From positions 124,001 to 188,000 of IMG/VR virus record IMGVR_UViG_3300042923_000281: a stretch of 64,000 nt of DNA, one strand, 5' to 3'. Shown one piece after another: positions 647-61,387 of this stretch (the first letter of the stretch is position 1; every line of letters starts with the position of its first letter). A program made the position numbers and the translations under genes. Below the pieces are notes generated by a model. It had not been told where the DNA came from and ran no database searches. It saw nothing but the letters and a program-made list of their open reading frames with translations.

Positions 647-676
647 CGGCATAAACGCCGCCCCGAAGGACGGCGT
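647..676 (-). terminator. GC hairpin (UUCG loop) followed by TTATGCCG
   Basis: Minus strand ACGCCGTCC-TTCG-GGGCGGCGT-TTATGCCG right after the stop of 681..1160. Confidence 0.7.
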
Positions 677-680
677 CGAA

Positions 681-1160
681 TCAGCGATAGGTATCGTAAC
701 TCGGGTGCGTAAACGGCACGCTCTTCCTCGAGAGATCACCCAGCAATTCAGTGCGCTCCTTGCGTTCCAGCAAGTTGATTGCGAAACGAGCAAGTTTCAG
801 CGGGGTGAGATCACCCTGCCGTTCAAAGATGTACCAGTTGTTGAGCTCGACCGCACGGAAGGCTCCTGGCAACGTGTTGTTGATGTACCCTTGCACGAGG
901 GTGGCTTCTCGTTGGGTGACACCTTCAAGTGTGGCATCAAGGATCTGAAGTTCCTTCACGCGGGTAGGACGGTTGCGTGGAGCACCAGTCTTTTCCCACA
1001 GACGTTCCAATGCCTTCTCGTCTTTAACGCAGAGCCCCCGCTCTACATCAAACCTGACGAGCGCCATCCCTTGCTTAGCCGGAACTTCTCCCTTGACTAG
1101 AAACAGCTCATTACCCGGTTGCCCCAAGATCACCGGTACTACATATTTGCCTTTCGACAT
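681..1160 (-). CDS. hypothetical protein
   Basis: 159 aa ORF between a promoter motif and a terminator. Confidence 0.75.
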   Translation of the reverse strand: MSKGKYVVPVILGQPGNELFLVKGEVPAKQGMALVRFDVERGLCVKDEKALERLWEKTGAPRNRPTRVKELQILDATLEGVTQREATLVQGYINNTLPGAFRAVELNNWYIFERQGDLTPLKLARFAINLLERKERTELLGDLSRKSVPFTHPSYDTYR

Positions 1161-1236
1161 GGAGAGTTATCCCTTAAAACTCAGCTCGACTCTTATTCTT
1201 CACGGTTATGTGTTGGCTTTATTGTCATGCTCGTGG

Positions 1237-1244
1237 ATAATGTA
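1237..1244 (-). promoter_or_regulatory. putative phage early promoter TACATTAT
   Basis: Recurrent intergenic motif resembling the phiKZ early consensus TATATTAC. Confidence 0.55.
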
Positions 1245-1290
1245 GGGTCATTTAATGATGGAGTGGAATACCCCAATCATACAATGATGC

Positions 1291-1316
1291 GAAATAAAGG
1301 GAGGGCCGAAGCCCTC
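1291..1316 (-). terminator. intrinsic terminator
   Basis: GAGGGC-TTCG-GCCCTC followed by CCTTTATTT. Confidence 0.75.
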
Positions 1317-1319
1317 ACC

Positions 1320-2486
1320 TTATAGAACGCCTGGACCACCGAGCACAAGCAGCGAGCCTTCAAAGTCCAAGTAGTAGGACCAGTAGGGTGCAACCGTGTT
1401 CTTGTAGAGACGCCCTGGGGTCATCACATCAGGGTTGGTGAACTTCCCTGCATTGACCCACGAGCTTGTGGTAGCGTTCCAACGCCACACCGTTTTATCA
1501 CGGCTGTCGATGATGTCACGCTTGGCCACCGGCACTTGCAGGTTCTTCCACGTAGCTGCTGGTTGAGACACAGCAATGTAACCAATCTGGCACGGAGACT
1601 GGAACATGACCGGGATGTCAACCGTGGCGAAGATAGGGTTCGGCCATGGAGTACCGTCTGCCTGTGTGGCAGTGATTTCCAATTGGTTAGTCTTCTTGCG
1701 AACGACCTTGACCTTGATGCCCGCTTGCAGAGGCCCAGCCGCTGCCCACGTTTGACGAGGAATACCCAACTCCTGAGACCACAACGGAACAGCGCCGTTA
1801 GCAGCGCCTTGGTTATAGTTCACACCGCACCAAATGACTGGTGTTTTGGTTTCGTCGTAGTTGCCCGCTGGGAGCATACCGCCGCCGCTGACCAAGACTG
1901 TCAAGGTGTACTCTCGACCATTGGCTCGCTTGAATGCCGCGCACATGCCGATGGTGTCGTCATCACCACCCGTTGACTTCATGATGGTTTCGAAGGTGTA
2001 TTCTTCGAAACGATCCAAGCCAATCAACCCGATCAGACTGCCTGAGTTGACAGTAGACGACGCACTGTCTGTGGCGCTGTCGTACGCCCAACTGTTCATC
2101 TCAGAGACGTTGTTAGGGAACTGCAAGTTGTTACCGTGACTGATCCGTTGCCACGTGTTGTACACGTCAGCGAATGAAACGGTTTCAGCCTTGAGTGCGT
2201 TGATCGCATCGTCGTTGTCGGCCATGCGGAACTTCAGAAGCACCTCGCCACTGACGAACGACATCGGAGTCCCTTCCTCTTTAAAGAAAGGAAGTTCACC
2301 ACGACGACCATTGACCGTGCCAAGACTCTCTTGAACCACAGCCGATTTAACTTCAGCTAATGTCTTGCCGCCAAGTTTGGCTGAGTCCGTAGCCTGGGCA
2401 GTGGCGTCAAGCTTACTGGAAATCTTTGTACGAATTGCTTTAAGGATGCCATCAAATTTGACAGCCAACTGCGATGGGGTAGCCAT
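1320..2486 (-). CDS. virion/tail-fibre-associated protein with beta-sandwich (lectin-like) C-terminal domain
   Basis: N-terminus (..ISSKLDATAQATDSAKLGG) resembles the N-terminus of fibre 25311..26225; W/G/T-rich beta domain with a GGDDDTIG motif; start chosen at MATPSQL. Confidence 0.6.
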   Translation of the reverse strand: MATPSQLAVKFDGILKAIRTKISSKLDATAQATDSAKLGGKTLAEVKSAVVQESLGTVNGRRGELPFFKEEGTPMSFVSGEVLLKFRMADNDDAINALKAETVSFADVYNTWQRISHGNNLQFPNNVSEMNSWAYDSATDSASSTVNSGSLIGLIGLDRFEEYTFETIMKSTGGDDDTIGMCAAFKRANGREYTLTVLVSGGGMLPAGNYDETKTPVIWCGVNYNQGAANGAVPLWSQELGIPRQTWAAAGPLQAGIKVKVVRKKTNQLEITATQADGTPWPNPIFATVDIPVMFQSPCQIGYIAVSQPAATWKNLQVPVAKRDIIDSRDKTVWRWNATTSSWVNAGKFTNPDVMTPGRLYKNTVAPYWSYYLDFEGSLLVLGGPGVL

Positions 2487-8744: not shown

Positions 8745-8788
8745 TACAGATTCCCCTTACTTTCGGTTATGGTTGTAGTTCCACGATT

Positions 8789-8796
8789 ATAATGTA
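8789..8796 (-). promoter_or_regulatory. putative early promoter TACATTAT
   Basis: Recurrent motif with AT-rich upstream sequence. Confidence 0.6.
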
Positions 8797-8829
8797 TTGC
8801 CTTATAATTTTTAATTACAATCGGTGAAA

Positions 8830-8856
8830 CGGCATAAAGGCGGGACTAGCCCGCCT
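8830..8856 (-). terminator. hairpin plus TTATGCCG
   Basis: AGGCGGG-CTAGT-CCCGCCT-TTATGCCG. Confidence 0.7.
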
Positions 8857-8860: not shown

Positions 8861-9271
8861 TCAACGACGATAGCCAAGATCGGCGTGTGGATCATCTTTC
8901 TCTGCCAAGCCTTCAAACGCATTGCTGAAGCCTACTGGCATGGAGGACTTCAATACCCGGACCACGTCGTGACTGGGCTTAGGGCGTGACATCAGCTTCT
9001 TCATCCAGTCCACATTGAAACCGATGAATTCACGTTTGCCTTTGACAGACAACACACCACGACGGACATTGAACCGGTTGGCGTAGCTCTTCATGTTTTC
9101 AACAGGACCGTTCAGAATGGCGATGAAGACCTCGTTCTCCAAGTCCGGCATGAGCAGGTGAGGGAGGGCTTCGATCAGGTGAGTCTCGGTGATCCCTAAG
9201 CCAGCAGCAATCGTTAACGCCTCGTCCTCAGAGTCGGCAATGATGATACTGATACCGTTTTCATTACGCAT
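8861..9271 (-). CDS. hypothetical protein
   Basis: Start at MRNENGISII with AGGAG RBS. Confidence 0.75.
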   Translation of the reverse strand: MRNENGISIIIADSEDEALTIAAGLGITETHLIEALPHLLMPDLENEVFIAILNGPVENMKSYANRFNVRRGVLSVKGKREFIGFNVDWMKKLMSRPKPSHDVVRVLKSSMPVGFSNAFEGLAEKDDPHADLGYRR

Positions 9272-9297: not shown

Positions 9298-9337
9298 CGG
9301 CATAAATGGGCAGCATGAGTTTGAGCCCATGCTGCCC
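9298..9337 (-). terminator. hairpin plus TTTATGCCG
   Basis: GGGCAGCATGGG..CTCATGCTGCCC-ATTTATGCCG. Confidence 0.7.
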
Positions 9338-9482
9338 GGTACAGGCGCCGTTGAAACGTATGCTACTGGCTCCCGCCGTTGCTAAACCGTTTCGGGTTAA
9401 GCGTGTGCTGGATCACCCCCTCACTAGACAGTATCTACTGCCTGTACATACAATAGGATCACCTCGATTAGTTTTTAGCTAC
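9300..9482 (-). ncRNA. candidate small structured RNA with 16S rRNA 3'-end-complementary tracts
   Basis: Lies between the TACATTAC motif (9487-9494) and a terminator; only very short minus-strand ORFs seen; closing stem GTACAGGC/GCCTGTAC; tracts TGAGGGGGTGATCCAGC and GAGGTGATCC. Confidence 0.45.
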
Positions 9483-9486
9483 GAGG

Positions 9487-9494
9487 GTAATGTA
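9487..9494 (-). promoter_or_regulatory. putative early promoter TACATTAC
   Basis: One mismatch to the phiKZ early consensus TATATTAC. Confidence 0.6.
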
Positions 9495-9526
9495 TCGTTT
9501 GAGTAAAATCAAATCCACTATAAACA

Positions 9527-9688: not shown

Positions 9689-10204
9689 ATGTCTGACATT
9701 TCCCTGCTTTCCAAGGACCAAGTACTTGCCTTGGTCAACGAGCAAAACCCGGGCCTGAACCTTACGCACGAGAAAGTCACTTTCGGTGATCCTGTCGCAG
9801 CGTCTGGTGAAAACCCGGAACGTAACACTGAACTGGTCATGACCGGTATCCCGGGCAAGGGCTTCAAGAACACTGCCACCATCCTTTACAACCGGATCGA
9901 CTTGGCAGACTTCGAAGTTCAGATCCCATCGCAGATCCAAGTAGAAGGCGATGTGACCATCCAATCCATTCTGGATGGTTTCAACCTGTTCTACGGGGCG
10001 AACCTGCAACTGAACGACGTGCGTAGCGACCTCACGCTGCCCGGCGATCTGACCAGCACTCCGGAAGACTTCACCCTGATCGCCGCTGCGGGCTCCTACG
10101 CCTACCGTGGTCAGGTGGTCATCAGTATCCAGATGGCTGACCAAGACCTGAACGCTGCCGTCACCAAGAAAGTCCTGGATGGCTTGACGCTCTCCCTGAG
10201 CTAA
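9689..10204 (+). CDS. virion structural paralog (Ig-like tail/baseplate family, DUF7941-like)
   Basis: Family motif RNT.l...g..g.gf.....i.YNRiDL...A..GS.aY.G. Confidence 0.75.
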   Translation: MSDISLLSKDQVLALVNEQNPGLNLTHEKVTFGDPVAASGENPERNTELVMTGIPGKGFKNTATILYNRIDLADFEVQIPSQIQVEGDVTIQSILDGFNLFYGANLQLNDVRSDLTLPGDLTSTPEDFTLIAAAGSYAYRGQVVISIQMADQDLNAAVTKKVLDGLTLSLS

Positions 10205-10282
10205 TGGTGCTGGTAGTTGACCAGAACGCGCACTGGGGCCTTCGGGTCTCAGTGGCATTAGTCTCTTAACCGGGAAAGAATC

Positions 10283-11122
10283 ATGTCAATCTACAGTCAG
10301 TCGCCCGACCAGATGGTGCGCGAACTGATCAACAATGCCAACACCCCTCTCGTTCCCTTCGCTCCAGAGAACTTGACCTTCGGTACGCCCCAAGTTGTAA
10401 CGGGCAATCCTTCTGTCAACGCCACAGTGAAGGTGCGAGGTATCCAGGGTGAGGTCTACGCTGGTCAGGTTGCTATTTCGTACAATCGCTTGGACCTTGG
10501 TGTCCTGTACCGCGGTAACTACCGCCCAGAATTCACGGCGTTGGGTCAATCGACCCTCTATCGTCTATTGCCTGAGATCAACAAGGCCCTCGGCCTGAAC
10601 TTGACGAAGAACGACTTGATTGACGTCGACCTCAAGTTGTTGGAAGAAGGCGATCAGGTCAACCTTGAACTGCGTGCTAAGCCTGGCTCGTTGGCTTACA
10701 CCGGTCTGGCCACGATCTTGTTCAACCGTCGGCAGTTGATGCTCACGGACGTCTTGCCAGTGGAAGCGTTCGAAGAGTTCAAACACGCTGACCCAGTCCT
10801 TGAAGGTTATCAGAGCGCTGGTTTGCTTACTTGGGGGCAGGATTTCACGATCATTGCGCAGTACCTCAAGGTCAACCGTTACGGTAACAACTACAAGGGT
10901 AGCTGGATCGACGAAGCCGGGCTCAGAGCAGGCCTGGCTCAGTATTTCGGCATCGAGAATTGGCCGAGGATTGACACGAGTGCCAACTCCAAGATGACGA
11001 TCAGGGATTACGCCACGAAAGATCACCCGGATGCCAACCGTAACTACCAGCGGGTGGTGGTGCAAACCAGCCTGCGCAGCGACGGGTACTCCGGTACTGC
11101 TTTCTTCCACTATAACGCCTGA
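10283..11122 (+). CDS. virion structural paralog (N-domain plus C-terminal ..HYN domain)
   Basis: YNRLDL and GSLAYTG motifs; C-terminus PDAN..Y.RVVV...G..FFHYN. Confidence 0.75.
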   Translation: MSIYSQSPDQMVRELINNANTPLVPFAPENLTFGTPQVVTGNPSVNATVKVRGIQGEVYAGQVAISYNRLDLGVLYRGNYRPEFTALGQSTLYRLLPEINKALGLNLTKNDLIDVDLKLLEEGDQVNLELRAKPGSLAYTGLATILFNRRQLMLTDVLPVEAFEEFKHADPVLEGYQSAGLLTWGQDFTIIAQYLKVNRYGNNYKGSWIDEAGLRAGLAQYFGIENWPRIDTSANSKMTIRDYATKDHPDANRNYQRVVVQTSLRSDGYSGTAFFHYNA

Positions 11123-11135
11123 TCGGAGATGACTC

Positions 11136-11984
11136 ATGTCTCTTTATAAGAACCCCGTCACGACGCTTTTGAACGTCGTCGGGAGTTACAACGGGATCAC
11201 GCTCGATCCGGCTGACTTCGACTTCATCGATCCTCGGCCGAACACCAGCGGCAAGCATCCTGAGCAAAACTCCATCGTCACCATCAAGGCCAACAACGCC
11301 TTTGCCCCGTATCAGGGCGAGACCGTGGTGTACTACAACCGTCTGGACTTGGCTGACTTGGCGAAACTCGTCACGTTAACCATGAAGGCCCCAAGCGTCA
11401 CCAACTCCCACGACCTCCTGCCGTTCCTGAATGACCGTTTCGGTCTGAACCTGGAAGAGTCGGATCTGGAACTGGTTGATGCTGAAGACATGACCGATTA
11501 CAAGACCGTGCAACTGACGGCTGTACCGGGCAGTCTGGGTTGGATCGGCACTGTGTCCATTTCGGTGGCACAAGGTGACATCCCGCTGACCAACTACCTG
11601 ACGACCACTGCACTCAACGGTCTGAACTACCCAACGCCGTACGCTACCCTGCCGTTTGCGCAGATGTACAGCTACTGGCGTGACTTCTCGGCTCACGTGA
11701 ATTACCTGAAGACCATCACGGCTGGTCAGGCGATCCCACAAGAGCTGGCTGACATCCTCTCCAGCATCACTGGCGACGCATGGTTCCGTACTGGCTACCA
11801 TGAGTTCAGTCTGGGCGGTGCTCAGGTTGTGTGGGCTGGTAAAGCGGCTGACAACGGTCTGATGAACCCGTCGTACGACTACGGCATTCAGGTCCGTCTG
11901 AACCACGATGATGCGTTCGGTATCACTGGCGACTTGATCATTCACTTCAGCGATCCGGTTGACCCGTTCGCTCAGCCAGCGTGA
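11136..11984 (+). CDS. virion structural paralog
   Basis: YNRLDL, GSLGWIG, LNGLNYP motifs. Confidence 0.75.
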   Translation: MSLYKNPVTTLLNVVGSYNGITLDPADFDFIDPRPNTSGKHPEQNSIVTIKANNAFAPYQGETVVYYNRLDLADLAKLVTLTMKAPSVTNSHDLLPFLNDRFGLNLEESDLELVDAEDMTDYKTVQLTAVPGSLGWIGTVSISVAQGDIPLTNYLTTTALNGLNYPTPYATLPFAQMYSYWRDFSAHVNYLKTITAGQAIPQELADILSSITGDAWFRTGYHEFSLGGAQVVWAGKAADNGLMNPSYDYGIQVRLNHDDAFGITGDLIIHFSDPVDPFAQPA

Positions 11985-11992
11985 GGTGAGTC

Positions 11993-12796
11993 ATGGACGG
12001 ACGTGATCTGATTATCCAGATGGTCAACGAGCAGAACACTCTGTATCGGCCGATCACGCTGGACAACGTGGCGATGTCGCTGCCTGTAAAGAAAGGACAG
12101 AACGATCCGCGTAACACCGGGGTGACCCTCAGTGGCGTACACGGTAAGGGCTACAAAGGTCAGACGGAGATCTTCTACAACCGTCACGACTTGCCTGAGC
12201 TGTTTGGTGAAGCGGGCATCACGCCTAACCTTCGTCACAACGCTGAGATCACTCCAGCCTGGATCATCGACAAGTTGAACACCAAGTACGGCCTGTACCT
12301 TGAGGCCACGGACTTGAACAACATCGATGTCCCTATCTTCGACCAATTGGAAACTACCAAGCCCATCGAGATCGTCGTCAAAGACAACTCGTGGAACTGG
12401 GTCGGGACCATTACCCTCGAAATGACCTACGGCAACCCATTACTGGAAACCGTGGTCTTGGTACAGCTCCTGCCGATCCTGGAACACCCCACGGATCACA
12501 AAGAGCTTCGAGGTCGGAAGTCCGGGTACATGTGCACGTACAACTTCGACTTCACAGCCTATAAAGCTGACCTGCAACGTGACCCGAAGACTGGCCGTTG
12601 GGCTAACTTCGACTTGGTCATGGCCGCAGGCGCCAAAGCAGGTTTGCCCGCATGGGGTAATGCAGGCGGGATCGTCGACCTCCCAACCAGCGCAATGCCT
12701 GAAGCCAACCCGAAGTTTCAACGGGTGATGGTGCAGAGCTACGCGACCGGTGGTGTGGTAGGTCCGATCTTATTCCACTACGACCTGGACTGGTGA
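11993..12796 (+). CDS. virion structural paralog
   Basis: RNTGV..GKGYKG..YNRHDL; PEANPKFQRV..FHYD. Confidence 0.75.
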   Translation: MDGRDLIIQMVNEQNTLYRPITLDNVAMSLPVKKGQNDPRNTGVTLSGVHGKGYKGQTEIFYNRHDLPELFGEAGITPNLRHNAEITPAWIIDKLNTKYGLYLEATDLNNIDVPIFDQLETTKPIEIVVKDNSWNWVGTITLEMTYGNPLLETVVLVQLLPILEHPTDHKELRGRKSGYMCTYNFDFTAYKADLQRDPKTGRWANFDLVMAAGAKAGLPAWGNAGGIVDLPTSAMPEANPKFQRVMVQSYATGGVVGPILFHYDLDW

Positions 12797-12826
12797 TTCC
12801 TGTCCTTTCTTGAGAAGGTTTAGCTC

Positions 12827-13831
12827 ATGGCTATCTATAGCAAAACGACCAAGCAGATGATGGTCGATCTGATTAACGCAGGGAATCCGCAACTGCCATT
12901 CCCGATCAACGAGACGGACTTCGAGTTCGGTCTGCCGGAAGTCATCGCTGACCCAGGCAATGGCCACAACACTCGCATCCGGATCACTGCGAAACCGAAC
13001 ACCAACTACGTCGGCAACGTACAGCTTACCTATCGTCGTCTGGACGTGGGCCGTATCTTCCGCAACATGACGCTGGAAGTGTCTCGCTGGGTTGCCAACA
13101 CCGGCGCCAACGGTAGCCCTCTGATTCTGCTGAGTTCGCTGTACCCGCTTTATAGCGAGAAGTACGGTTTCAACTTCGCAGTGGGTGAATGGGGCGACGG
13201 TAACTTGAGTGGCCTCAATGGTATCCGCGGTGACGTGTTTAACATCGCGCCGATTGCCAACAACTTGGCTTTCGTGGGTAACGTGCAGGGCAAGTGGACC
13301 ATCGGTGAACGTACGCTGGAATCGCTACTGTCTGTAGACGTTGTTGCAGGTCGTCGCTACCCAGGCGGTAATGACTTCGTGACTCCGGGCCACAAGTACT
13401 GGGTCACCCCAGACGGCTTCGACATGGACTTCTCGGCATTCAAGGACACGCTGGAATCGGGTGTTGTGGCCACAGGCTACGCTGGCGGTATCCGTGCTAA
13501 CGTGTACGTGGGCGACAACTACGCTGACGGTAGCCAACCAATTCGTCAGATCATCGAGAACAACATTCTCAAGACGCTGAAGAACCGCAATGGCGATTTC
13601 TACACCATTGTAACGGCTGGCGGTCCTGCGGCTGTCACCGAAGCCATGACCACGCCATTCCGGTTGAACGGTGCGTACTTCCGTCGCTATGCCCTCCCGC
13701 ATGCTGACGTGCCAGAAGCCAACTCCGAGTTCTACAACCGTTGCTTGGTCATCAGTGTGAATGACGCCTTCGGTGGTCTGGGCCAGCGTGACTGGGGCAC
13801 TGGTCGCATCCTTCTCCACTACAACGTCTAA
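12827..13831 (+). CDS. virion structural paralog
   Basis: YRRLDV; LP..VPEAN..YNR.LVI...GRILLHYNV. Confidence 0.75.
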   Translation: MAIYSKTTKQMMVDLINAGNPQLPFPINETDFEFGLPEVIADPGNGHNTRIRITAKPNTNYVGNVQLTYRRLDVGRIFRNMTLEVSRWVANTGANGSPLILLSSLYPLYSEKYGFNFAVGEWGDGNLSGLNGIRGDVFNIAPIANNLAFVGNVQGKWTIGERTLESLLSVDVVAGRRYPGGNDFVTPGHKYWVTPDGFDMDFSAFKDTLESGVVATGYAGGIRANVYVGDNYADGSQPIRQIIENNILKTLKNRNGDFYTIVTAGGPAAVTEAMTTPFRLNGAYFRRYALPHADVPEANSEFYNRCLVISVNDAFGGLGQRDWGTGRILLHYNV

Positions 13832-13842
13832 GGGCAGGTGCC

Positions 13843-14721
13843 ATGACTATTCATTTCAACTCCAAGCAGAGTTTGGTGAACTACATCAACGCTGCTAACA
13901 GTTCACCACTGACCGTGGATGAGCTGGACTTTGGTACACCGCAGCCCACAGCAGGGACGTGGCGTGAAGGGTTGGTCAATGCCAACACCGCTATCAAGAT
14001 CACTGCTAAAGAAGCCTCGGTGTTCCAAGGTTCTCGCGTGATCTGCTACGACCGCCTGAACCTGCCGGATCTTTCGACCCTGGCCAACGGGCTGTCGGTC
14101 AAGTGCTACCAGCCTGCGACCAACTTCGACGTGCTGCCTGCGTTGTTCCGCCGTTACGGGATTGTGCTGAGTAAGGAAGACTTCATCGAAGAGCCTTTCG
14201 CTCACGATGGTGCTAACCCCACTCCGTGCGTGTTCAAAGCCAAGCCAGGTGCTATCGGCTGGACAGGTCAACTGACCGTCATGTCCCAGTCGGGCTCTGC
14301 GGTACTGGGCCAGCACTTGACTCAAGCAGCTCTGCCGGGGCTGAACTACCCAGTGACCGGTGACGGTTCTCAAGGTTCGGCACTGACTTACCTCTACGGG
14401 TATGATTTCACAGCGTACAAGTCGACGCTGGAGAACTACCAAGTGGGCACCAAGTTGGGTGCGGCTGATACAGCGCTTCTGGCTGCGATCAAGGCGATTG
14501 ACACCAACGCCGGTAAGTCGCTGTGGAACTTGGACCCGGCAAGCACTGCGTGGTCTCTGGAGGGCGCTGAGGTTGTCTACAGCGGTATCAACTCCAATGT
14601 CCTGCCAACTAACCAGTCGTACAAGTACGCACTCGGTCTGTTGCTCAAGGCGACCAACATCACGCCTCCGGGCGTGTGCTACCTCCACTACGACGATCCG
14701 TTCGATCCGAACGAGGTGTGA
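13843..14721 (+). CDS. virion structural paralog
   Basis: YDRLNL, GAIGWTG, LPGLNYP; C-terminus YLHYDDPFDP similar to 11136..11984. Confidence 0.75.
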   Translation: MTIHFNSKQSLVNYINAANSSPLTVDELDFGTPQPTAGTWREGLVNANTAIKITAKEASVFQGSRVICYDRLNLPDLSTLANGLSVKCYQPATNFDVLPALFRRYGIVLSKEDFIEEPFAHDGANPTPCVFKAKPGAIGWTGQLTVMSQSGSAVLGQHLTQAALPGLNYPVTGDGSQGSALTYLYGYDFTAYKSTLENYQVGTKLGAADTALLAAIKAIDTNAGKSLWNLDPASTAWSLEGAEVVYSGINSNVLPTNQSYKYALGLLLKATNITPPGVCYLHYDDPFDPNEV

Positions 14722-14767
14722 GTAAACGGCCCTAGGTAACTGGGGCCATCACAAAGGAAGACTGAAG

Positions 14768-15631: not shown

Positions 15632-15642
15632 CGAGGACGCCC

Positions 15643-16128
15643 ATGGCTCTTATTCAAGGTTCGAAAGTTGACCTCGTGTCAGCATTGAACCGGGAGACGC
15701 CAGTCGCATTGGACTACGCTGGGTTGGTTTTCAGCCCAGTCGTACCGCTCCAGTCTGATCCGTCCGGCAAGTTGGTGAAGGTGCGCTTGTCGACACTTCC
15801 CACCTACACGTACAAGGGCAACGATGTCCTTGAATACAGCCGGCGTAATCTGGCCGATCTACCCGGTATCTTTCCGGTACTTCCACGCTGCGTCCCCGGT
15901 GCTACGCTGTACGCCATGCTGACGGCCTTGGCCGATGGGACCAGCATCCTGTTCACAACTGACGATCTCGAAGATGCACCGGTGGTCACCCGTCAAGACG
16001 GTAACTATCAAGTGCAGTTGACGGCGAAGGCAGGCTCGTATGCTTGGTACGGTACCGGCTTGTTGGTATTCCGCAACCTTCCTCACATTTCGTTGGCCAT
16101 CGTGGACAACAACCTCTCCTGGAGTTAA
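15643..16128 (+). CDS. virion structural paralog, N-domain only
   Basis: Start MALIQG with GAGGA RBS; YSRRNL and AKAGSYAWYG motifs. Confidence 0.75.
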   Translation: MALIQGSKVDLVSALNRETPVALDYAGLVFSPVVPLQSDPSGKLVKVRLSTLPTYTYKGNDVLEYSRRNLADLPGIFPVLPRCVPGATLYAMLTALADGTSILFTTDDLEDAPVVTRQDGNYQVQLTAKAGSYAWYGTGLLVFRNLPHISLAIVDNNLSWS

Positions 16129-16131
16129 GTG

Positions 16132-16476: not shown

Positions 16477-16478
16477 TC

Positions 16479-18101: not shown

Positions 18102-18103
18102 TC

Positions 18104-19165: not shown

Positions 19166-19170
19166 CTATC

Positions 19171-20694: not shown

Positions 20695-20731
20695 CGGCAT
20701 ATTCGGGAGGGCTTCGGCCCTCCCTTATTTT
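20695..20731 (+). terminator. intrinsic terminator with CGGCATA on its 5' flank
   Basis: GGGAGGGC-TTCG-GCCCTCCC-TTATTTT. Confidence 0.85.
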
Positions 20732-20817
20732 GCTGGACCCATCGTGTAATTTTTTACGACCTATCCTATGAGGTCAGGAATTCTTGATCTTTTCGTAAAC
20801 CTGCATCGGAGATCGCC

Positions 20818-21371: not shown

Positions 21372-21406
21372 AGAGCGAGGGCCATCGGCCCTCGCTCTTT
21401 ATGCCG
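21372..21406 (+). terminator. hairpin plus TTATGCCG between convergent genes
   Basis: AGAGCGAGGGCC-ATC-GGCCCTCGCTCT-TTATGCCG. Confidence 0.8.
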
Positions 21407-22239: not shown

Positions 22240-22260
22240 GGGTTGAAATAAATTCGAATC

Positions 22261-22288
22261 GAAATAGAGAGGGGACCGAAGTCCCCTC
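22261..22288 (-). terminator. intrinsic terminator
   Basis: GAGGGGAC-TTCG-GTCCCCTC-TCTATTTC. Confidence 0.75.
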
Positions 22289-22291
22289 CCC

Positions 22292-22738
22292 TTATGCCGA
22301 TTCGAAGTGACTGGCAGCGAACCACCGGACACCGTAGAAGAACATCCCTGCACGCCAACGGGCAATGCCTTCACCACGAAGAGCACGGTAGAAGATCTCG
22401 TCAGCTTGTTGGCGAGTCACCTTGACCTGTTCACCATTGACGGTAATGGTACCGCCACTGTATAGCCAGTCATGGATCGTTGCCGCCATGTCCCCGTAAT
22501 CAGCCAGCAAGGCGTACACAGGGAATAACACAATATTACGCAAGGCATCCAGCGATGCGTAGTTGGTCTTGAATCCCTTCGGCACCGTGATGGTTCCGTA
22601 GACTTCATCATCGAAGCTGAAGTCCGCGAGCATCAGGTACTCACGCTTACCCACCTGACGCGTGTCGAAGTTGGAGAAGCGTTTGAAGTATTTCACTTCA
22701 GCCGGGGTGTCTGTAAATTGGGGAAGTGGAATATCCAT
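22292..22738 (-). CDS. DUF1353-family protein
   Basis: ITVPKGFKTNYAS, AATIHDWLY, R.QAD.IF..AL...W....Y.GVR motifs. Confidence 0.8.
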   Translation of the reverse strand: MDIPLPQFTDTPAEVKYFKRFSNFDTRQVGKREYLMLADFSFDDEVYGTITVPKGFKTNYASLDALRNIVLFPVYALLADYGDMAATIHDWLYSGGTITVNGEQVKVTRQQADEIFYRALRGEGIARWRAGMFFYGVRWFAASHFESA

Positions 22739-26308: not shown

Positions 26309-26338
26309 CGGCATAGAGGCGGGCCTAGGCCCGCCTCT
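26309..26338 (-). terminator. hairpin plus ATGCCG
   Basis: AGAGGCGGGC-CTAG-GCCCGCCTCT-ATGCCG. Confidence 0.75.
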
Positions 26339-44072: not shown

Positions 44073-44103
44073 CGGCATAAAGGCGAGAGCCGAAGCCCTC
44101 GCC
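44073..44103 (-). terminator. hairpin plus TTTATGCCG
   Basis: GGCGAGGGC-TTCG-GCTCTCGCC-TTTATGCCG. Confidence 0.75.
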
Positions 44104-44115
44104 CTCATGTCACCC

Positions 44116-47225: not shown

Positions 47226-47316
47226 GGTTTAGCTTCCGGAATAAGGGGCCAGGAATGTGTTCCTGGCCCAGGGTGTTTGTCATAGAGGATGAAACTCTAG
47301 TTCTTTAAAACGAAGA

Positions 47317-47365: not shown

Positions 47366-47728
47366 TTATGCAGTCAACAACCAGTTGTAGCCCGTCCACG
47401 CGTAGACGAACAACGCAGGATACAGGAGGCCACAGTCGAGGATGTGGGTCCAGTAAGACTTGTACTCATAGCGCAGTTCTTTGCCTGTGCTGCTGAGGAA
47501 TTCTTCGATGTTCTTCACCAGCCACCAGTGATGGTAAAGGTTGATGAAGAAACGGCCTGCGTTGACGAAGGGAATCCGGCCTACCTTGTAATCCACCTGA
47601 TGAGGACCCAATGGAATGGTTCCACTGACCCTCGGGTAAATCAAGCCGTGTACAATGTACGCGACCAATAGAACGATGAAACCTGACATTGCAAACAGGT
47701 GGATAGAGAAGGCCAAGTGGGCGCCCAT
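47366..47728 (-). CDS. membrane protein
   Basis: N- and C-terminal hydrophobic helices. Confidence 0.75.
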   Translation of the reverse strand: MGAHLAFSIHLFAMSGFIVLLVAYIVHGLIYPRVSGTIPLGPHQVDYKVGRIPFVNAGRFFINLYHHWWLVKNIEEFLSSTGKELRYEYKSYWTHILDCGLLYPALFVYAWTGYNWLLTA

Positions 47729-51718: not shown

Positions 51719-51732
51719 GATACCCTCCTACG

Positions 51733-51758
51733 GGCATAAAGCGGTGGGCGGACCCACC
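51733..51758 (-). terminator. hairpin plus TTTATGCC
   Basis: GGTGGG-TCCG-CCCACC-GC-TTTATGCC. Confidence 0.6.
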
Positions 51759-51770
51759 ACTCAGGGGAAG

Positions 51771-52451
51771 TTACGCAGGAACGCTCACCGGTCTTCTGCG
51801 CAAGTGTGCGTCGATCTGCATCAAGTACGGGATCAACTGAGCCTGCACTTGTTCGAACGCTTGTTCAGCGTCAATCACCGCGTAACGGTTCATGTCCAGG
51901 ATCGCGCACTCTTTGTAGACCTTGCGAGTGGCGTGGTGGAACTCGATCGGCTTGAGGTCGTAGAAGTTCAAGGCGTCATCGCCTCGACCTGCCATCCGCT
52001 CACGGAACACTTCAGGATTGCCATCAAGTAAGATGGTCAAGTCCGGTTTGAAGTTGTCGAACGCAACATCGTGCAGTACACGCAGCTTGCTGGTAGCGAC
52101 GCCTTCTTGAGTCTGGTAAGCAAACGTGCTGTCACAGAACCGATCAGTGATAACCAGCTCGCCATTGGCCAGACGAGGCTTGATGAGCATCTCAATGTGC
52201 TGCGCACGAGCCGCCATGAACTTGAAGGTCTGGGTCAGTGCGCAGACAGGTTCTTCATGGTCCTTACGCTTGCGCAGGATGTCCTCACGGATCATCTCAG
52301 CTTCTGGTGTGCCGCCTGGTTCACGGGTGAGCACGGCAGTGATGCCATGACCGTTGAACCATTCGTTTAACCACGTGCGGAGGGTGGACTTGCCTGCCCC
52401 ATCTGGTCCTTCGATACCGAGCAGAAAGCCCTTGTGATTCGGTAACAGCAT
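51771..52451 (-). CDS. tmk: thymidylate kinase
   Basis: IEGPDGAGKST P-loop, TREPGGT, DRF.DST.AYQ, PDLTILLD. Confidence 0.95.
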   Translation of the reverse strand: MLLPNHKGFLLGIEGPDGAGKSTLRTWLNEWFNGHGITAVLTREPGGTPEAEMIREDILRKRKDHEEPVCALTQTFKFMAARAQHIEMLIKPRLANGELVITDRFCDSTFAYQTQEGVATSKLRVLHDVAFDNFKPDLTILLDGNPEVFRERMAGRGDDALNFYDLKPIEFHHATRKVYKECAILDMNRYAVIDAEQAFEQVQAQLIPYLMQIDAHLRRRPVSVPA

Positions 52452-55135: not shown

Positions 55136-55165
55136 CGGCATAATGGGAGGACCGAAGTCCTCCCA
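55136..55165 (-). terminator. hairpin plus TTATGCCG
   Basis: TGGGAGGAC-TTCG-GTCCTCCCA-TTATGCCG. Confidence 0.75.
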
Positions 55166-55170: not shown

Positions 55171-55494
55171 TCACACCGCGGTGTAGAACTTCATGAACTT
55201 TGCCAGCGACAAGCTTTGGGTGTGCTTGTCTTCTTCCTTGTCCTTGAACAGGGCGACATCCTTGCGGACTTCGACCAGGAAGATCTTCGAGGTGACGCCA
55301 TTGCGCGTGGTCTTGTACCATGCGTTGTTGGCACCTTCGAACTTCAGCGGTTCAGGCTGTACTTGAGGTTTACGCTCAGGTTGAGCAATCTCACGCAAAG
55401 CCCCCAAGCTGCTCATGGTGTTACCGACCGGTTTCGGACGACGATCAACACTGGCAGATGGACGAGTATCTTTCCACGAGGTTCTTTGGTTCAT
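55171..55494 (-). CDS. basic hypothetical protein
   Basis: 107 aa ORF. Confidence 0.75.
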   Translation of the reverse strand: MNQRTSWKDTRPSASVDRRPKPVGNTMSSLGALREIAQPERKPQVQPEPLKFEGANNAWYKTTRNGVTSKIFLVEVRKDVALFKDKEEDKHTQSLSLAKFMKFYTAV

Positions 55495-58256: not shown

Positions 58257-59677
58257 TTGAATCTCCTTTTGAACACGCGCAGCAGCGTGAACAGAATAGG
58301 GAAGTAATAGAAGCGTTCCAGGTTGTCCCAATGGATGGCGTGTGTGCAGAGGTAGTCAAGCGTGGTGATGTCGATGGCATCGCCTTTCATGGCGGCCATG
58401 GTCAATGCTTCCAGCTTGCTCAACTTCGTGTCTGGCTTGTGCAGATAGAAGTCTTTACTCAGCACGTAATAGTTGTCGACCGTGACACGCTTGATCTGTG
58501 GGGTACGCTCTGGCGAGTTAACCTCATAGATTTCCAGCGTCGGGTCTACATTTAACGTATCCTTGAGCAGACGGTTCAGATCCCGGAACCGGGCAGCACC
58601 ACGCACCAGCCGTTCGAGGTCTGGATCACCGATGTACGGGCCATAACCGCTGTCTGCGTCAGTACGGGACATGTCAGGGTAGATGACGGCTTCAACACCC
58701 GAGTAGTACACGCTGTTCAACGTAGGACGACGGTTGAAGAACTGGTCCACGTCCACCACACCTGCCTCGTGAACACTCATGGCCAGCATGGCATGGTCCA
58801 TGGTCTCCAGACAGTTCCAGAACGTGAACTCGTACATCGTCTGGTCGCCCTGGACGTTGAACTCGGTCAGGCTGCGCATGGCCGGATGATCCTGAGTGGT
58901 CAGGATGGTCTTCAGGTAACGCACGAGGAACGGGTCGTAGGTGATCCGTGGACGTTGGGCTTCACGCTGGTTCGGCACCAGCAACGAGTTCAGGTTACGG
59001 GAGAAGTGATCGTGGAAGTACAAGGCGATCAGACGCTCGTAGTGTTCCTTGAGGCGGTTGACCAGTTCGGTCTGCCCCTCGGAGATCATTGGATCGTTGC
59101 CGGTGTCCAAGAACTCCTTGTGGAAGACCGTGGTCTCTTGGGCACTGAAGTTGTACAGCTTGTCATGCAGCTCTTGATCGACAGGGCTGATGAGGCTGTA
59201 CTCGATCTCGTGAACGGTCGAGGTGTAGTGCGTCAGTCGATTGGTCGACGTCACACCAAACATGCCTTCACGGCCATCGCCCATGTCACCCAGGAAGATG
59301 TCGCCTTCCTTCGGTGGAAGCACCCCGTAGACGTTTGCAGCGCCTTTGAGCGTCATGTCCTTGGTGTCGCCCACCTGAGACGGCGTCAACGGCTGCGTGA
59401 CCTTCAGTTCAAAGCCCTTGATGAGCTTGTACTGTTGGAAGATCGGGTGCGTGTCCCGTTCTTGCAAGCGGTTGTCATCGTCCCGACCACGGATCAACCA
59501 GAAGTAGTCGATGGTCCACGACTGGCCTGCAATGTAGCTGGTCAACTGGTCGAAGTGGGTTTCACTTGTGTCGACCGTATTACCGATGTAGGCCTTCGGT
59601 TGGACCTTGACAGGTTCATTGACCGGCTTGCCGACAACGGTGTCGATGTTAGGCATCGTTGGAACTGGCATCTTCAT
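58253..59677 (-). CDS. virion structural protein
   Basis: 474 aa; L..YI.G..W..DY, P.EGD.F..D.GDGR.G.F.V, YDPF. Confidence 0.65.
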   Translation of the reverse strand: MKMPVPTMPNIDTVVGKPVNEPVKVQPKAYIGNTVDTSETHFDQLTSYIAGQSWTIDYFWLIRGRDDDNRLQERDTHPIFQQYKLIKGFELKVTQPLTPSQVGDTKDMTLKGAANVYGVLPPKEGDIFLGDMGDGREGMFGVTSTNRLTHYTSTVHEIEYSLISPVDQELHDKLYNFSAQETTVFHKEFLDTGNDPMISEGQTELVNRLKEHYERLIALYFHDHFSRNLNSLLVPNQREAQRPRITYDPFLVRYLKTILTTQDHPAMRSLTEFNVQGDQTMYEFTFWNCLETMDHAMLAMSVHEAGVVDVDQFFNRRPTLNSVYYSGVEAVIYPDMSRTDADSGYGPYIGDPDLERLVRGAARFRDLNRLLKDTLNVDPTLEIYEVNSPERTPQIKRVTVDNYYVLSKDFYLHKPDTKLSKLEALTMAAMKGDAIDITTLDYLCTHAIHWDNLERFYYFPILFTLLRVFKRRFK

Positions 59678-61310
59678 TCACCCTGTTACGGTTACCAGCA
59701 ATGACCGTCAAGTACATCACGTACGGAATGTCAAGACGGAAGCCGAAGTTGTCATCATTGTCATACCAGCTTTCGCTAGGGTGACGGTTGTTATTGTTGC
59801 TGCCATCAGGCCCTGGACCGTTGTTCTCAGACCCGACACGCTGATCCTGCAAGAAGCCAAAGAAGCGCTTGATGTAGGAGATGCTGAGTTTGCCGTCTTC
59901 CGTCATGTGGTTCTGTTGAGCGTCCACGACGTCCAAACGGTTGACCACAGTCTGGAACAGGTGCAGGGTGTTGTACCCTTCCTCATGCATGCCCATCAGA
60001 GCCGCTTCGGTGTACTTGGCCAGCTCGGTGCAGAACGCCATACGCACGTGGTACGTTTGACGCAAGTCGGCTGGGGTCTTGCAGCGGATCTCGAACGCTT
60101 TGTCCGTGACGGTCACTTCCATGTCGCCATCGTCGATGAACTGATCACCGCGGAACAAACTGAAGTGAATCGGACTACGGCCCAACGTGGCCATCTTGTT
60201 GCCCTGACGCTGCATCCACGCGATGAACTCAGGCTTGAAGCCCACATCAAGGATATCCTTCTCCGAGAGCACCAGCGTCAAGTCAGCCGGTTCAATCACC
60301 GTCATCCAGTTGATGAACGAGGTGGTGTACGGCATGACGGACTTGGGAATCCACTCATCGAAGTCAGGGATCATGATCCCGCCGATTGGCTTCTTCGGAA
60401 TGCGAGCCAAGTAGTCGAAGTGATCCAGCGCAAAGCGGTAGTCGCTCTTGTAGCTGGGCAGCATCATCGGGTCTTCGGTCTTCGCCTTGATGACGAGGAA
60501 GTCAGGTTTGATGAGCTGGTTGTGCACGATCTGCGGGTAGTACACGTTCAGCTCTACAGGCTTCAGGTAACTGAACTTGTAGTTGAACTGCACGATGTAA
60601 CTTGGACCGTCTTCCTGCTTCTCTTCTTCCACAGGCAGGTCGAAGTCGAACCATCCTTGGATACCGATCTGGGTTTCACCGATGACCAACAGCGTAACGT
60701 TTTCATTACCGGCTTGGTTGGTCAGGACTTTGGCCCGCTTGGTGTAATAACGACGCAAGTATTCGCCAAGGTTCTCACCGTAACCGGCTACGTTCTCACG
60801 CAGCTCATGCATGTGGATCAACAGACCTGCACAGAAGTCTGGCACAGCAAAGAAGTACTCGGCTTGGTGCAAGTGCGATTGACGGTTGTCTGCCATGCGC
60901 ACTTTGATGTCGTCACGCCACACAGCCGCTTCCTGTTTGGACTTGGCACGGTAGGTGAAGTTCAGCTCCATCTCGGTGTTGCTGTAGATGGGTTTGATGT
61001 GCACGCCAATCTGAGGATCAGCAAAAATAGGTTGGGCATACGGGTGACGGACTTCGCTGTTGATCACCTCGGTGTCCACGTAAGTTTCACGCAGCGAGAC
61101 AATTACACGCCCGTCATGTTGCCAGCGGTTAATCAGTTTGGTGTCGCCCAGTTCAGTACCGGGCTGTGCGGCTACACCCGAATCGCCCCTGATCTCAATA
61201 CGAGTGTCGGGAATGCGGGAGATGCGCACGACGTTGTCAATCACCGACTTGGCCACACGGCGTGTGACGGTATCGTAAGTGTTCGGCAACGGGATAAGAA
61301 GGTTAGGCAT
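59649..61310 (-). CDS. virion structural protein
   Basis: 553 aa core-block ORF between internal-head and baseplate-type genes. Confidence 0.65.
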   Translation of the reverse strand: MPNLLIPLPNTYDTVTRRVAKSVIDNVVRISRIPDTRIEIRGDSGVAAQPGTELGDTKLINRWQHDGRVIVSLRETYVDTEVINSEVRHPYAQPIFADPQIGVHIKPIYSNTEMELNFTYRAKSKQEAAVWRDDIKVRMADNRQSHLHQAEYFFAVPDFCAGLLIHMHELRENVAGYGENLGEYLRRYYTKRAKVLTNQAGNENVTLLVIGETQIGIQGWFDFDLPVEEEKQEDGPSYIVQFNYKFSYLKPVELNVYYPQIVHNQLIKPDFLVIKAKTEDPMMLPSYKSDYRFALDHFDYLARIPKKPIGGIMIPDFDEWIPKSVMPYTTSFINWMTVIEPADLTLVLSEKDILDVGFKPEFIAWMQRQGNKMATLGRSPIHFSLFRGDQFIDDGDMEVTVTDKAFEIRCKTPADLRQTYHVRMAFCTELAKYTEAALMGMHEEGYNTLHLFQTVVNRLDVVDAQQNHMTEDGKLSISYIKRFFGFLQDQRVGSENNGPGPDGSNNNNRHPSESWYDNDDNFGFRLDIPYVMYLTVIAGNRNRVNEDASSNDA

Positions 61311-61356
61311 GGGGGCTCCCCCGGATGGATGATCTCTGACATAAAATCAGTCGATT

Positions 61357-61387
61357 CGGCATAGGAGGAGGACCGAAGTCCTCCTCC
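61357..61387 (-). terminator. hairpin plus TATGCCG
   Basis: GGAGGAGGAC-TTCG-GTCCTCCTCC-TATGCCG. Confidence 0.8.

What the first reader, a model, noticed from the sequence alone, without database searches (positions are those of the whole stretch)
647..61387. Conserved TATGCC(G) box beside GC hairpins: a second termination or re-initiation signal
Eleven intergenic hairpins have TATGCC(G) within a few nt of one arm. It lies 3' of the hairpin on the transcribed strand at 647, 8830, 9298, 21399, 26309, 44073, 51733, 55136 and 61357. At 20695 and 22292 it lies on the opposite side, where a normal U-tract serves the sense gene. Stems differ while the box is nearly invariant, and it replaces the long U-tract. 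Established: phiKZ-like phages use their own virion and non-virion RNAPs, and TATG is the phiKZ late promoter core. Inference: a sequence-specific terminator for a phage RNAP, a processing site, or a late promoter opened by hairpin extrusion.
Basis: partly seen in the sequence, partly recalled or inferred. Interest (0 to 1): 0.6.

Follow-up and report, generated by a model that had tools for sequence, protein, structure and literature searches.

The report
Jumbo-phage terminators: hairpin plus TATGCCG tail
The TATGCCG box after GC hairpins is real and strongly non-random, and it is this phage's version of the conserved transcription terminator already mapped in phiKZ and 201phi2-1, so it is a stop signal and not a promoter.

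Summary
In the window, 10 of 12 TATGCCG copies plus one TATGCCC sit 0-4 nt 3' of a GC hairpin, against 0.44 expected (P about 3e-13). Across the 277-kb genome the figure is 31 of 50, against 2 expected.

The window belongs to a phiKZ-like jumbo phage. It has homologues of chimallin, all five nvRNAP subunits and a vRNAP subunit.

The box fits the published phiKZ terminator motif (hairpin + YTTATKYYGT; Putzeys 2024, ONT-cappable-seq). Reanalysing their tables, mapped RNA 3' ends fall within 4 nt of the TATG G at 28 of 74 phiKZ hairpin-TATG sites. Mapped starts fall within 3 nt at 0 of 47.

In this genome the box follows same-strand stop codons by about 13-90 nt. Of 50 such sites, 26 face a convergent gene, and these junctions usually carry TATG on both strands. 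Orthologous sites in three relatives keep TATGCCG while the stems are replaced.

The two "opposite-side" sites have the T-rich variant (TATTTTG, TATTTCG) on the sense side.

Verdict: this is a new member of a known terminator kind. The hairpin-extrusion promoter reading is not supported. An open question is why the TATG core matches the late-promoter core bound by nvRNAP gp123.

The parts
647..677 (-). Terminator: hairpin 654-677 and box TATGCCG 647-653. It lies after gene 681-1160(-) and 55 nt before the start of the next gene at 592.
   Evidence: fold -19.2 kcal/mol. The DT01 ortholog keeps TTTATGCCGCATGTCAAA with compensatory stem changes.
1290..1321 (-). Terminator, T-variant: hairpin 1297-1321 and TATTTCG 1290-1296, after gene 1320-2486(-).
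8830..8856 (-). Terminator: hairpin 8838-8856 and box 8830-8836, after gene 8861-9271(-). An early-promoter-like motif ending in AATACAT at about 8798 follows it.
9298..9337 (-). Terminator: hairpin 9308-9337 and box 9298-9304. It ends a roughly 180-nt ORF-less transcript and sits about 27 nt (box end to ATG) before the start codon of gene 8861-9271(-). This is a premature or attenuator-type terminator.
20695..20732 (.). Two-sided terminator: hairpin 20705-20724. The sense (+) flank is TATTTTG 20726-20732, after gene 19171-20688(+). The antisense (-) flank is TATGCCG 20695-20701.
21372..21406 (+). Terminator: hairpin 21372-21398 and box 21400-21406. It closes the + strand block of tail and virion genes (9731-21354).
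22260..22299 (.). Two-sided terminator: hairpin 22267-22290. The sense (-) flank is TATTTCG 22260-22266, after gene 22292-22738(-). The opposite (+) flank is TATGCCG 22293-22299 and overlaps that gene's stop codon.
26309..26337 (-). Terminator: hairpin 26316-26337 and box 26309-26315, after gene 26341-27177(-). A conserved TATGTA at 26275-26278 follows it.
44073..44105 (-). Terminator: hairpin 44080-44105 and box 44073-44079, after gene 44116-44778(-).
47237..47269 (-). Terminator, T-variant: hairpin 47246-47269 and TATTCCG 47237-47243, after gene 47366-47728(-).
51732..51762 (-). Terminator: hairpin 51739-51762 and box TATGCCC 51732-51738, after gene 51771-52451(-). The next start codon is only about 14 nt past the box.
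   Evidence: In the DT01 ortholog the flank reads TTTGCCC (TATG not kept).
55136..55165 (-). Terminator: hairpin 55144-55165 and box 55136-55142, after gene 55171-55494(-).
61357..61387 (-). Terminator: hairpin 61364-61387 and box 61357-61363, after gene 61393-62817(-), which gives a weak phiKZ internal-head-protein match.

Best explanation
Each hairpin plus (Y)(T)TATGCCG unit is an intrinsic, hairpin-dependent transcription terminator of a phiKZ-like jumbo phage. It is this clade's version of the conserved terminator mapped in phiKZ and 201phi2-1.

Shown or supported by homology:
- The RNA hairpin forms and the transcript ends about 6-8 nt past the stem, inside the box. In phiKZ the mapped tails read UUAUG(Y)(Y).
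- The fixed tail therefore stands where a bacterial terminator has its U-run.
- In tandem gene arrays the unit faces one way. At convergent gene ends the same hairpin usually carries TATG on both strands and stops both directions.
- A T-rich variant (TATTYYG) and a long-T class also occur.

Inferred, not shown:
- UUAU supplies a short weak RNA:DNA hybrid.
- The two pyrimidine-then-G steps (UAU|G and CC|G) act as pause points that hold the polymerase at the right distance from the hairpin.
- Both phage RNAPs (virion and non-virion) use the signal, because it appears to close both early-promoter-type and structural (late-type) gene blocks. Gene timing was not measured here.
For: 1. Non-random association. 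10 of 12 TATGCCG in the window and 31 of 50 in the genome are hairpin-adjacent (P = 3e-13 and 5e-31). TATG is the top enriched 4-mer on hairpin 3' flanks.

2. Gene context.
- Of 70 intergenic hairpin-TATG sites, 50 have a same-strand gene ending within 90 nt upstream.
- 26 of those 50 face a convergent gene whose stop codon lies a few nt (mostly 4-15) beyond the TATG.
- Those junctions usually carry TATG on both strands.
- On strands where a gene ends upstream, 43 of 84 hairpin flanks are TATG-type, against 15 of 76 on the other strands.

3. Match to a mapped motif.
- phiKZ terminators share hairpin + YTTATKYYGT (PMC10914365).
- Their Table S4 sequences show (A)CATAA-hairpin-TTATGYYG.
- Against their coordinates, 28 of 74 strict phiKZ hairpin-TATG sites have a TTS within 4 nt of the G, mostly at offsets -1, +1 and +2. 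0 of 47 have a TSS within 3 nt.

4. Selection.
- In 99 site-ortholog pairs (two IMG/VR relatives and pPa_SNUABM_DT01), the CCG positions are 90-92% identical.
- The hairpin region is 62% identical and the downstream 10 nt are 71% identical.
- In 56 pairs the box is identical while the hairpin differs at 3 or more positions.

5. The phage is phiKZ-like. It has homologues of gp54, nvRNAP gp55, gp68, gp71, gp74 and gp123, vRNAP gp80, and the capsid protein gp120.

6. The layout matches phiKZ. Early-type promoter motifs or a second TATG lie 15-45 nt after the box.
Against: - There are no RNA data for this phage or its close relatives. Only DNA metagenome contigs hold it, so no 3' end is mapped here.
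- The literal 30-nt phiKZ consensus, stems included, finds nothing in the window. The match rests on the architecture and the 3' flank.
- ONT-cappable-seq 3' ends carry about 2 nt of uncertainty and cannot separate termination from 3' processing.
- Three window sites have no protein gene ending upstream on the box strand (9298, 20695, 22293). They are explained by an ORF-less transcript and by two-sided hairpins, but this is not proven.
- The pause and weak-hybrid mechanism is inference only.
Confidence: 0.85

Rival explanations
1. The box is a late promoter for the non-virion RNAP, starting at the G of TATG. The adjacent hairpin helps to open the DNA, or lets the polymerase re-initiate just after terminating.
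For: - TATG with +1 = G is the phiKZ late-promoter core (PMC4666361).
- It is bound on the non-template strand by gp123 (PMC12809450).
- This phage has a gp123 homologue that keeps 9 of 16 pocket residues.
- At tandem sites the box lies about 14-90 nt before the next start codon.
Against: - 26 of 50 sense sites fire into the 3' end of a convergent gene.
- Promoter-like intergenic TATGs, including two upstream of the capsid gene, have no hairpin and no CCG preference.
- In phiKZ, 0 of 47 hairpin-TATG sites carry a mapped TSS, while 19 of the 47 carry a TTS.
- At two orthologous DT01 sites the flank no longer reads TATG (TTTGCC instead) while the hairpin is kept.
- Many tandem sites have a separate promoter-like motif further downstream.
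Confidence: 0.06
2. The box marks an RNA processing or stabilising site. Read-through transcripts are cut or trimmed back to the hairpin, and the conserved tail is a nuclease or protein recognition site rather than a termination signal.
For: - Mapped 3' ends in phiKZ cannot separate termination from processing.
- The G of the CCG, which lies at or just beyond the mapped 3' ends, is conserved, so something other than the released RNA tail may be read.
- Some genes start too close after the box for a promoter of their own (51732), so read-through must occur.
Against: - A fixed 6-8 nt distance between stem and 3' end is the signature of intrinsic termination.
- Eight 201phi2-1 terminators stop transcription in uninfected P. 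chlororaphis in a terminator trap (PMC11512511).
- Use on both strands at convergent junctions fits termination of both genes.
Confidence: 0.07
3. The units are copies of a mobile palindromic element (REP- or MITE-like), or binding sites for a dimeric DNA-binding protein, with no role in transcription.
For: - Some units are long perfect palindromes with CGGCATA on one side and TATGCCG on the other (for example genome 88201-88245).
Against: - The stems differ from site to site, and differ between orthologous sites that have stayed in place.
- The placement is tied to stop codons and to gene orientation.
- Most units carry the full box on one side only.
Confidence: 0.02

Closest known systems
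Conserved intrinsic terminator motif of phiKZ (Putzeys et al. 2024, microLife, PMC10914365) and 'motif A' of 201phi2-1 (PMC11512511)
   Same: - A GC-rich stem-loop is followed at once by (Y)TTAT-K-Y-Y-G(T).
- A partner CATA(A/G) often lies 5' of the stem.
- It lies after stop codons and is two-sided at convergent genes.
- Early promoters lie about 35-47 nt downstream.
- TATG is enriched on hairpin flanks 9-fold in phiKZ, 11-fold in 201phi2-1 and 37-fold here.
   Different: - In this 54% GC clade the tail is sharpened to TATGCCG (31 of 70 intergenic sites), against TATGTCG, TATGTTG and TATGCTG in phiKZ.
- The stem sequences are not those of the phiKZ consensus.
- No RNA ends are mapped for this phage.
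phiKZ late promoter (5'-TATG-3', +1 at G; recognised by nvRNAP gp123)
   Same: The same four bases, in a phage that encodes a gp123 homologue with most pocket residues kept.
   Different: - The placement is after genes rather than before them.
- It is tied to a hairpin and to a CCG extension that promoter-like TATGs lack.
- Half of the sites face convergent genes.
- No mapped TSS coincides with such sites in phiKZ.
Canonical bacterial intrinsic terminator (GC hairpin plus U-tract)
   Same: - A GC hairpin with the RNA end 6-8 nt past the stem.
- Two-sided use at convergent genes.
- 201phi2-1 terminators of this family work with host RNAP, according to the paper (PMC11512511).
   Different: - The tail has only UUAU, followed by a conserved G-C-C-G in place of a U-run.
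- The sequence of the tail is itself conserved across orthologues and across genera.
Hairpin promoters of the phage N4 virion RNAP (from my own knowledge, not tested here)
   Same: A DNA hairpin next to a fixed short sequence in a phage that carries its own RNAP.
   Different: N4 uses a single-subunit RNAP and short hairpins with conserved sequence that lie upstream of early genes. Here the hairpins vary in sequence and lie downstream of genes.

Membership tests
phiKZ-type conserved intrinsic terminator (Putzeys 2024 motif; 201phi2-1 motif A) | A GC-rich stem-loop immediately upstream of the conserved flank. | tested here: met
   All 11 window sites have folds of -14.6 to -24.9 kcal/mol that end 0-4 nt before the box.
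phiKZ-type conserved intrinsic terminator (Putzeys 2024 motif; 201phi2-1 motif A) | A 3' flank that fits (Y)TTAT-K-Y-Y-G(T). | tested here: met
   - Genome-wide, 58 of 148 TATKYYG copies are hairpin-adjacent against 5.9 expected.
- The position matrix gives C 56%, C 53%, G 60% and T 39% after TATG.
- The same flank words are seen in phiKZ and 201phi2-1.
phiKZ-type conserved intrinsic terminator (Putzeys 2024 motif; 201phi2-1 motif A) | The literal 30-nt consensus, including the CCYCCCC...GGGRRGG stem. | tested here: not met
   There are 0 matches in the window at up to 3 mismatches. Stems vary within phiKZ too, so I treat the stem sequence as a lineage habit and not as a defining feature.
phiKZ-type conserved intrinsic terminator (Putzeys 2024 motif; 201phi2-1 motif A) | It lies downstream of genes in the sense orientation and is two-sided at convergent pairs. 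| tested here: met
   50 of 70 intergenic sites have a same-strand gene ending within 90 nt upstream, and 26 of those are convergent. TATG-type flanks are 43 of 84 on sense strands and 15 of 76 on non-sense strands.
phiKZ-type conserved intrinsic terminator (Putzeys 2024 motif; 201phi2-1 motif A) | The host phage is phiKZ-like, with its own multisubunit RNAPs. | tested here: met
   There are blastp homologues of gp55, gp68, gp71, gp74, gp123, gp80, gp54 and gp120, and Pfam RNAP beta and beta' hits.
phiKZ-type conserved intrinsic terminator (Putzeys 2024 motif; 201phi2-1 motif A) | RNA 3' ends map 6-8 nt past the stem. | not testable with these tools
   No RNA run holds this phage. The feature is shown only for phiKZ.
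phiKZ late promoter (TATG, +1 = G) | A TATG positioned upstream of the gene that it drives. | tested here: not met
   26 of 50 sense sites point into a convergent gene's 3' end.
phiKZ late promoter (TATG, +1 = G) | Primary 5' ends at the G. | not testable with these tools
   There are no RNA data here. In phiKZ, 0 of 47 hairpin-TATG sites have a TSS within 3 nt.
Canonical bacterial intrinsic terminator | A U-tract of about 5 or more U directly after the hairpin. | tested here: not met
   The tail reads (U)UUAUGCCG. Only 12 of 84 sense flanks in the genome are T-tracts.

The most novel reading that the evidence does not exclude

In this reading, when an elongating polymerase has the U of UAU at its 3' end, TATG sits at -3 to +1 exactly as in the open promoter complex. 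The pocket captures it and the enzyme pauses 5-8 nt past the hairpin, which then releases the RNA. One four-base word would then mark both starts and stops, with the hairpin and the CCG deciding which.

Observations that fit:
- The mapped phiKZ 3' ends lie at offsets -1 to +2 from the G.
- The G of the CCG, at or just beyond those ends, is conserved.
- The motif is strong in lineages whose gp123 keeps His185 and Lys190 (this clade, phiKZ, 201phi2-1) and weak or absent in EL and SPN3US, which have lost them. That is only five related lineages, so the correlation is weak.
Probability: 0.15. Interest if true: 0.65.

Novelty: new member of a known kind. Interest (0 to 1): 0.3.

Why it matters
- The motif gives a ready rule for annotating transcription units in an uncultured clade of GC-rich phiKZ-like Pseudomonas phages (this genome, two IMG/VR relatives and pPa_SNUABM_DT01). 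Hairpin plus TATGCCG marks an operon end. A plain TATG or an AT-rich ...AATACAT motif marks a likely start.
- It extends the published phiKZ and 201phi2-1 terminator motif to a third, distant lineage with about 25-40% protein identity.
- It shows that the tail, and not only the hairpin, is under selection.
- It shows that the motif is not universal among phages with phiKZ-type RNAPs. It is not enriched in SPN3US or AR9 and only weakly in EL.
- The sharper consensus here (TATGCCG) makes a clean template for testing how non-canonical phage RNAPs terminate without a U-run.

Tried and rejected
1. RNA evidence. The one run search found only DNA metagenome contigs, plus one peat metatranscriptome holding 7% of the words as contigs. 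Contigs cannot show RNA ends.
2. Rfam scan of the window at gathering thresholds: no hits.
3. The literal 30-nt phiKZ terminator consensus: no match in the window.
4. The degenerate TATKYYG alone is not enriched in the window (30 against 35.6 expected). Only its association with hairpins is.
5. TATG depletion as a sign of function. It is depleted under a Markov model (0.61) and under synonymous shuffling (0.45 sense, 0.34 antisense). The controls TATC and GATA are also depleted (0.64 and 0.53), so most of this is general TA avoidance. I treat it as inconclusive.
6. The search for related loci with the 474-aa neighbour protein reached only three close relatives.
7. The supplements of the two published transcriptome papers are not held. 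Only the bioRxiv supplement of the phiKZ paper was readable. I used TTS T001-T076 and TSS P008-P066, not the full tables.
8. Chance, a mobile palindrome and a hairpin-extrusion promoter were considered and rejected, as set out under the rival explanations.

No alternative genetic code was used.


Full report
**What the window is**

The window is bases 124001-188000 of a 276,978-bp virus record with direct terminal repeats and 54% GC. Its nearest named relative is Pseudomonas phage pPa_SNUABM_DT01, at about 74% nucleotide identity. Two 276-kb IMG/VR genomes are closer, at 91% and 80% amino-acid identity for one marker protein.

The genome encodes split RNAP beta and beta' pieces. By blastp, 77 of 331 predicted proteins match phiKZ at 25-40% identity. 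The matches include chimallin gp54, the five nvRNAP subunits gp55, gp68, gp71, gp74 and gp123, the vRNAP subunit gp80 and the capsid protein gp120.

- All eleven sites are present.
- TATGCCG occurs 12 times in the window against 4.3 in shuffles.
- Ten of these, plus TATGCCC at 51732, lie 0-4 nt 3' of a stable GC hairpin. Only 0.44 are expected from the background rate of such hairpins (P = 2.7e-13).
- Genome-wide, 31 of 50 TATGCCG and 89 of 536 TATG copies are hairpin-adjacent.
- In an unbiased scan of 4-mers on the 3' flanks of perfect hairpins with stems of 7 bp or more, TATG ranks first, at 52 observed against 1.4 expected.

**Where the units sit**

I built a simple self-trained gene map with 93% coding density. 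It gives 70 intergenic hairpin-TATG sites.

- Fifty have a same-strand gene ending within 90 nt upstream (mostly 23-60 nt).
- Of those fifty, 24 are followed by another gene on the same strand.
- The other 26 face a convergent gene whose stop codon lies a few nt (mostly 4-15) beyond the TATG.
- At such convergent junctions the one hairpin usually carries TATG on both strands, for example genome 25006/25034, 37513/37539, 88213/88239 and 100883/100911.
- On strands where a gene ends upstream of a perfect intergenic hairpin, 43 of 84 flanks are TATG-type, 12 are T-tracts and 29 are neither. On the other strands only 15 of 76 are TATG-type.

A signal that follows genes, and that appears on both strands exactly where two genes converge, behaves as a terminator. 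A promoter at these sites would fire antisense into a gene's 3' end.

**The three window exceptions**

- At 20695(-) and 22293(+) the genes run on the other strand. The sense-side flanks there read TTATTTTG and CTATTTCG, which is the T-rich form of the same TATKYYG word.
- At 9298(-) no ORF lies upstream. An early-promoter-like motif at about 9490-9520(-) would start a roughly 180-nt ORF-less transcript that ends at this hairpin.
- The core of that transcript is 89-97% identical across four phages, well above the roughly 74% seen in the large coding segments compared with DT01. It also folds with z = -2.6.
- Such 5'-UTR-derived small RNAs made by premature termination are reported for 201phi2-1 (PMC11512511).

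**The match to a known motif**

Putzeys et al. (PMC10914365) mapped phiKZ 3' ends by ONT-cappable-seq. They reported that 61 intrinsic terminators share a stem-loop followed by a TTAT region, with the consensus ...GGGRRGGBYTTATKYYGT. TTATGCCGT is one instance of TTATKYYGT.

The sequences in their Table S4 (bioRxiv supplement) read (A)CATAA-hairpin-(C)TTATG(Y)(Y)G, with two-sided pairs at convergent genes, exactly as here.

- 28 of 74 strict sites in 1-168.5 kb have a TTS within 4 nt of the G. The offsets are -1 (8 sites), +1 (8) and +2 (9).
- The released RNA therefore ends ...stem-UUAUG(Y)(Y), 6-8 nt past the stem.
- In the stretch for which I also had TSS data, 19 of 47 sites carry a TTS and none carries a TSS within 3 nt.
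- Most unmapped sites are the non-sense sides of two-sided hairpins.

As in this genome, phiKZ early promoters lie about 40-47 nt after such terminators (for example T011 to P012). Here an AT-rich motif, GATTCGAATTywTTTCAAC-AATACAT, follows many terminators.

**Selection on the tail**

At orthologous positions in G001, G002 and DT01 a hairpin with a TATG-type tail (usually TATGCCG) is retained, while the stems carry compensatory changes or are replaced outright. An example is genome 276520, with four different stems that are each followed by TATGCCGT.

- Over 99 site-ortholog pairs, the three positions that were not used for anchoring (C, C, G) are 90-92% identical.
- The hairpin region is 62% identical and the next 10 nt are 71% identical.
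- The conserved G of the CCG lies at or just past the mapped 3' ends in phiKZ. At least part of the signal may therefore be read on DNA or in the active site rather than in the released RNA. This is inference.

**Promoter-like TATGs form a separate class**

Forty-seven intergenic TATGs without a hairpin lie 16-144 nt upstream of same-strand genes. They include two before the capsid gene and several before large structural genes, and many are conserved as exact 12-mers in the relatives. After the TATG they show A or T, with no CCG preference.

In the window, four tandem terminators are followed 15-40 nt later by a second TATG, reading TATGTC at three sites and TATGTA at one (616, 26278, 55095, 61343). 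The layout is therefore terminator, then promoter, then gene. The box itself need not be the promoter.

**How it most likely works**

Shown here or by homology: this is a hairpin-dependent terminator whose 7-8-nt tail has a fixed sequence in place of a U-run.

Inferred: UUAU gives a short weak hybrid. The pyrimidine-then-G steps UAU|G and CC|G resemble the Y(-1)G(+1) part of the elemental pause signal of multisubunit RNAPs (my own knowledge). They would hold the enzyme at the distance where the hairpin can act. The mapped phiKZ offsets -1 and +2 fall on exactly these two steps (17 of 28).

Because the units appear to close both early-promoter-type and structural (late-type) gene blocks, for example 8798 to 647 and 9731 to 21406, both phage RNAPs probably respond. 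This too is inference.

Eight 201phi2-1 terminators also work with host RNAP in a terminator trap (PMC11512511). Strict specificity for the phage polymerases is therefore not established.

**How far the motif reaches**

Enrichment of TATG on hairpin flanks:

| Genome | Enrichment |
|---|---|
| This genome | 37x |
| G001 | 32x |
| G002 | 24x |
| DT01 | 21x |
| 201phi2-1 | 11x |
| phiKZ | 9x |
| EL | 3.8x |
| SPN3US | 1.4x |
| AR9 | 1.1x |
| PA5oct (unrelated jumbo phage) | 1.3x |

The motif is therefore lineage-restricted among phages with phiKZ-type RNAPs.

The structure paper PMC12809450 lists the gp123 residues that hold T-3, A-2, T-1 and G+1 of the late promoter. In an alignment of gp123 homologues, this clade keeps 9 of 16 of them at 29% overall identity. 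The kept residues include Phe151, His185, Asn186, Lys190 and His331. EL and SPN3US have lost His185 and Lys190.

This is compatible with a shared reader for promoter and terminator TATG. It rests on only five related lineages, and that paper discusses neither pausing nor termination.

**Verdict**

The finding is real and functional, and it belongs to a kind already described in 2024 for phiKZ and 201phi2-1. The terminator reading is supported. The promoter, hairpin-extrusion and re-initiation reading is not. What is new:
- a third, GC-rich lineage with a sharper consensus;
- evidence of selection on the tail;
- the restricted distribution;
- the unexplained identity of the terminator core with the late-promoter core.

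Noticed in passing
window 9305-9490 (-), core 9339-9457: A candidate small RNA or 5'-UTR attenuator. It is an ORF-less stretch of about 180 nt between an early-promoter-like motif (about 9490-9520) and the box terminator at 9298-9337. The core is 89-97% identical in G001, G002 and DT01, well above the ~74% seen in the large coding segments compared with DT01. The fold gives z = -2.6, two base pairs show compensatory changes, and there is no Rfam hit.
   Followed up: partly
window about 8768-8804 (-), 9490-9520 (-), 22200-22235 (-); ten or more further sites genome-wide: An AT-rich motif, GATTCGAATTywTTTCAAC-AATACAT, followed about 10 nt later by GTGA. It usually lies 30-35 nt after a terminator and resembles the layout of phiKZ early (vRNAP) promoters. 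It is conserved in DT01 at 8798.
   Followed up: partly
window 616, 26278, 55095, 61343 (-); genome 85986 and 86032 (-) upstream of the capsid gene: A second TATG without a hairpin or CCG lies 15-40 nt after four box terminators, reading TATGTC (TATGTA at 26278), and two more lie upstream of the capsid gene. Some are conserved in relatives. These are candidate nvRNAP (late) promoters.
   Followed up: partly
G000 59780-59803, 107119-107144, 111549-111576, 219744-219771, 259892-259907 and others (outside the window): A near-identical long T-run, CTTTCTTTTTTCTTTG(T), flanks one side of several hairpins, often opposite a TATGCCG or TATTCCG on the other strand. This is a second, stereotyped terminator tail class in the same genome.
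   Followed up: no
window 40270-41895 (-): The thymidylate synthase is 541 aa. The Pfam domain is split into two stretches, and about 190 extra residues sit inside the N-terminal half. No Pfam family explains the insert.
   Followed up: no
whole genomes of EL, SPN3US, AR9 and PA5oct (loci L096-L146): TATG enrichment on hairpin flanks is weak in EL (3.8x, with GTAT enriched instead). It is absent in SPN3US, AR9 and the unrelated jumbo phage PA5oct, which use T-rich tails. The terminator tail is therefore specific to certain lineages.
   Followed up: partly
G000 80672-82324 (-), the homologue of phiKZ gp123: Nine of the 16 residues reported to hold the late-promoter TATG in phiKZ gp123 are identical in this clade, at 29% overall identity. 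His185 and Lys190 are replaced in EL and SPN3US.
   Followed up: partly
window 21401-21970: The gene orientation is ambiguous. My caller picked a + ORF that starts at the ATG inside the box at 21400. Two small - strand ORFs (21407-21613 and 21626-21877) would instead end right at the box, as at the convergent junctions elsewhere.
   Followed up: no
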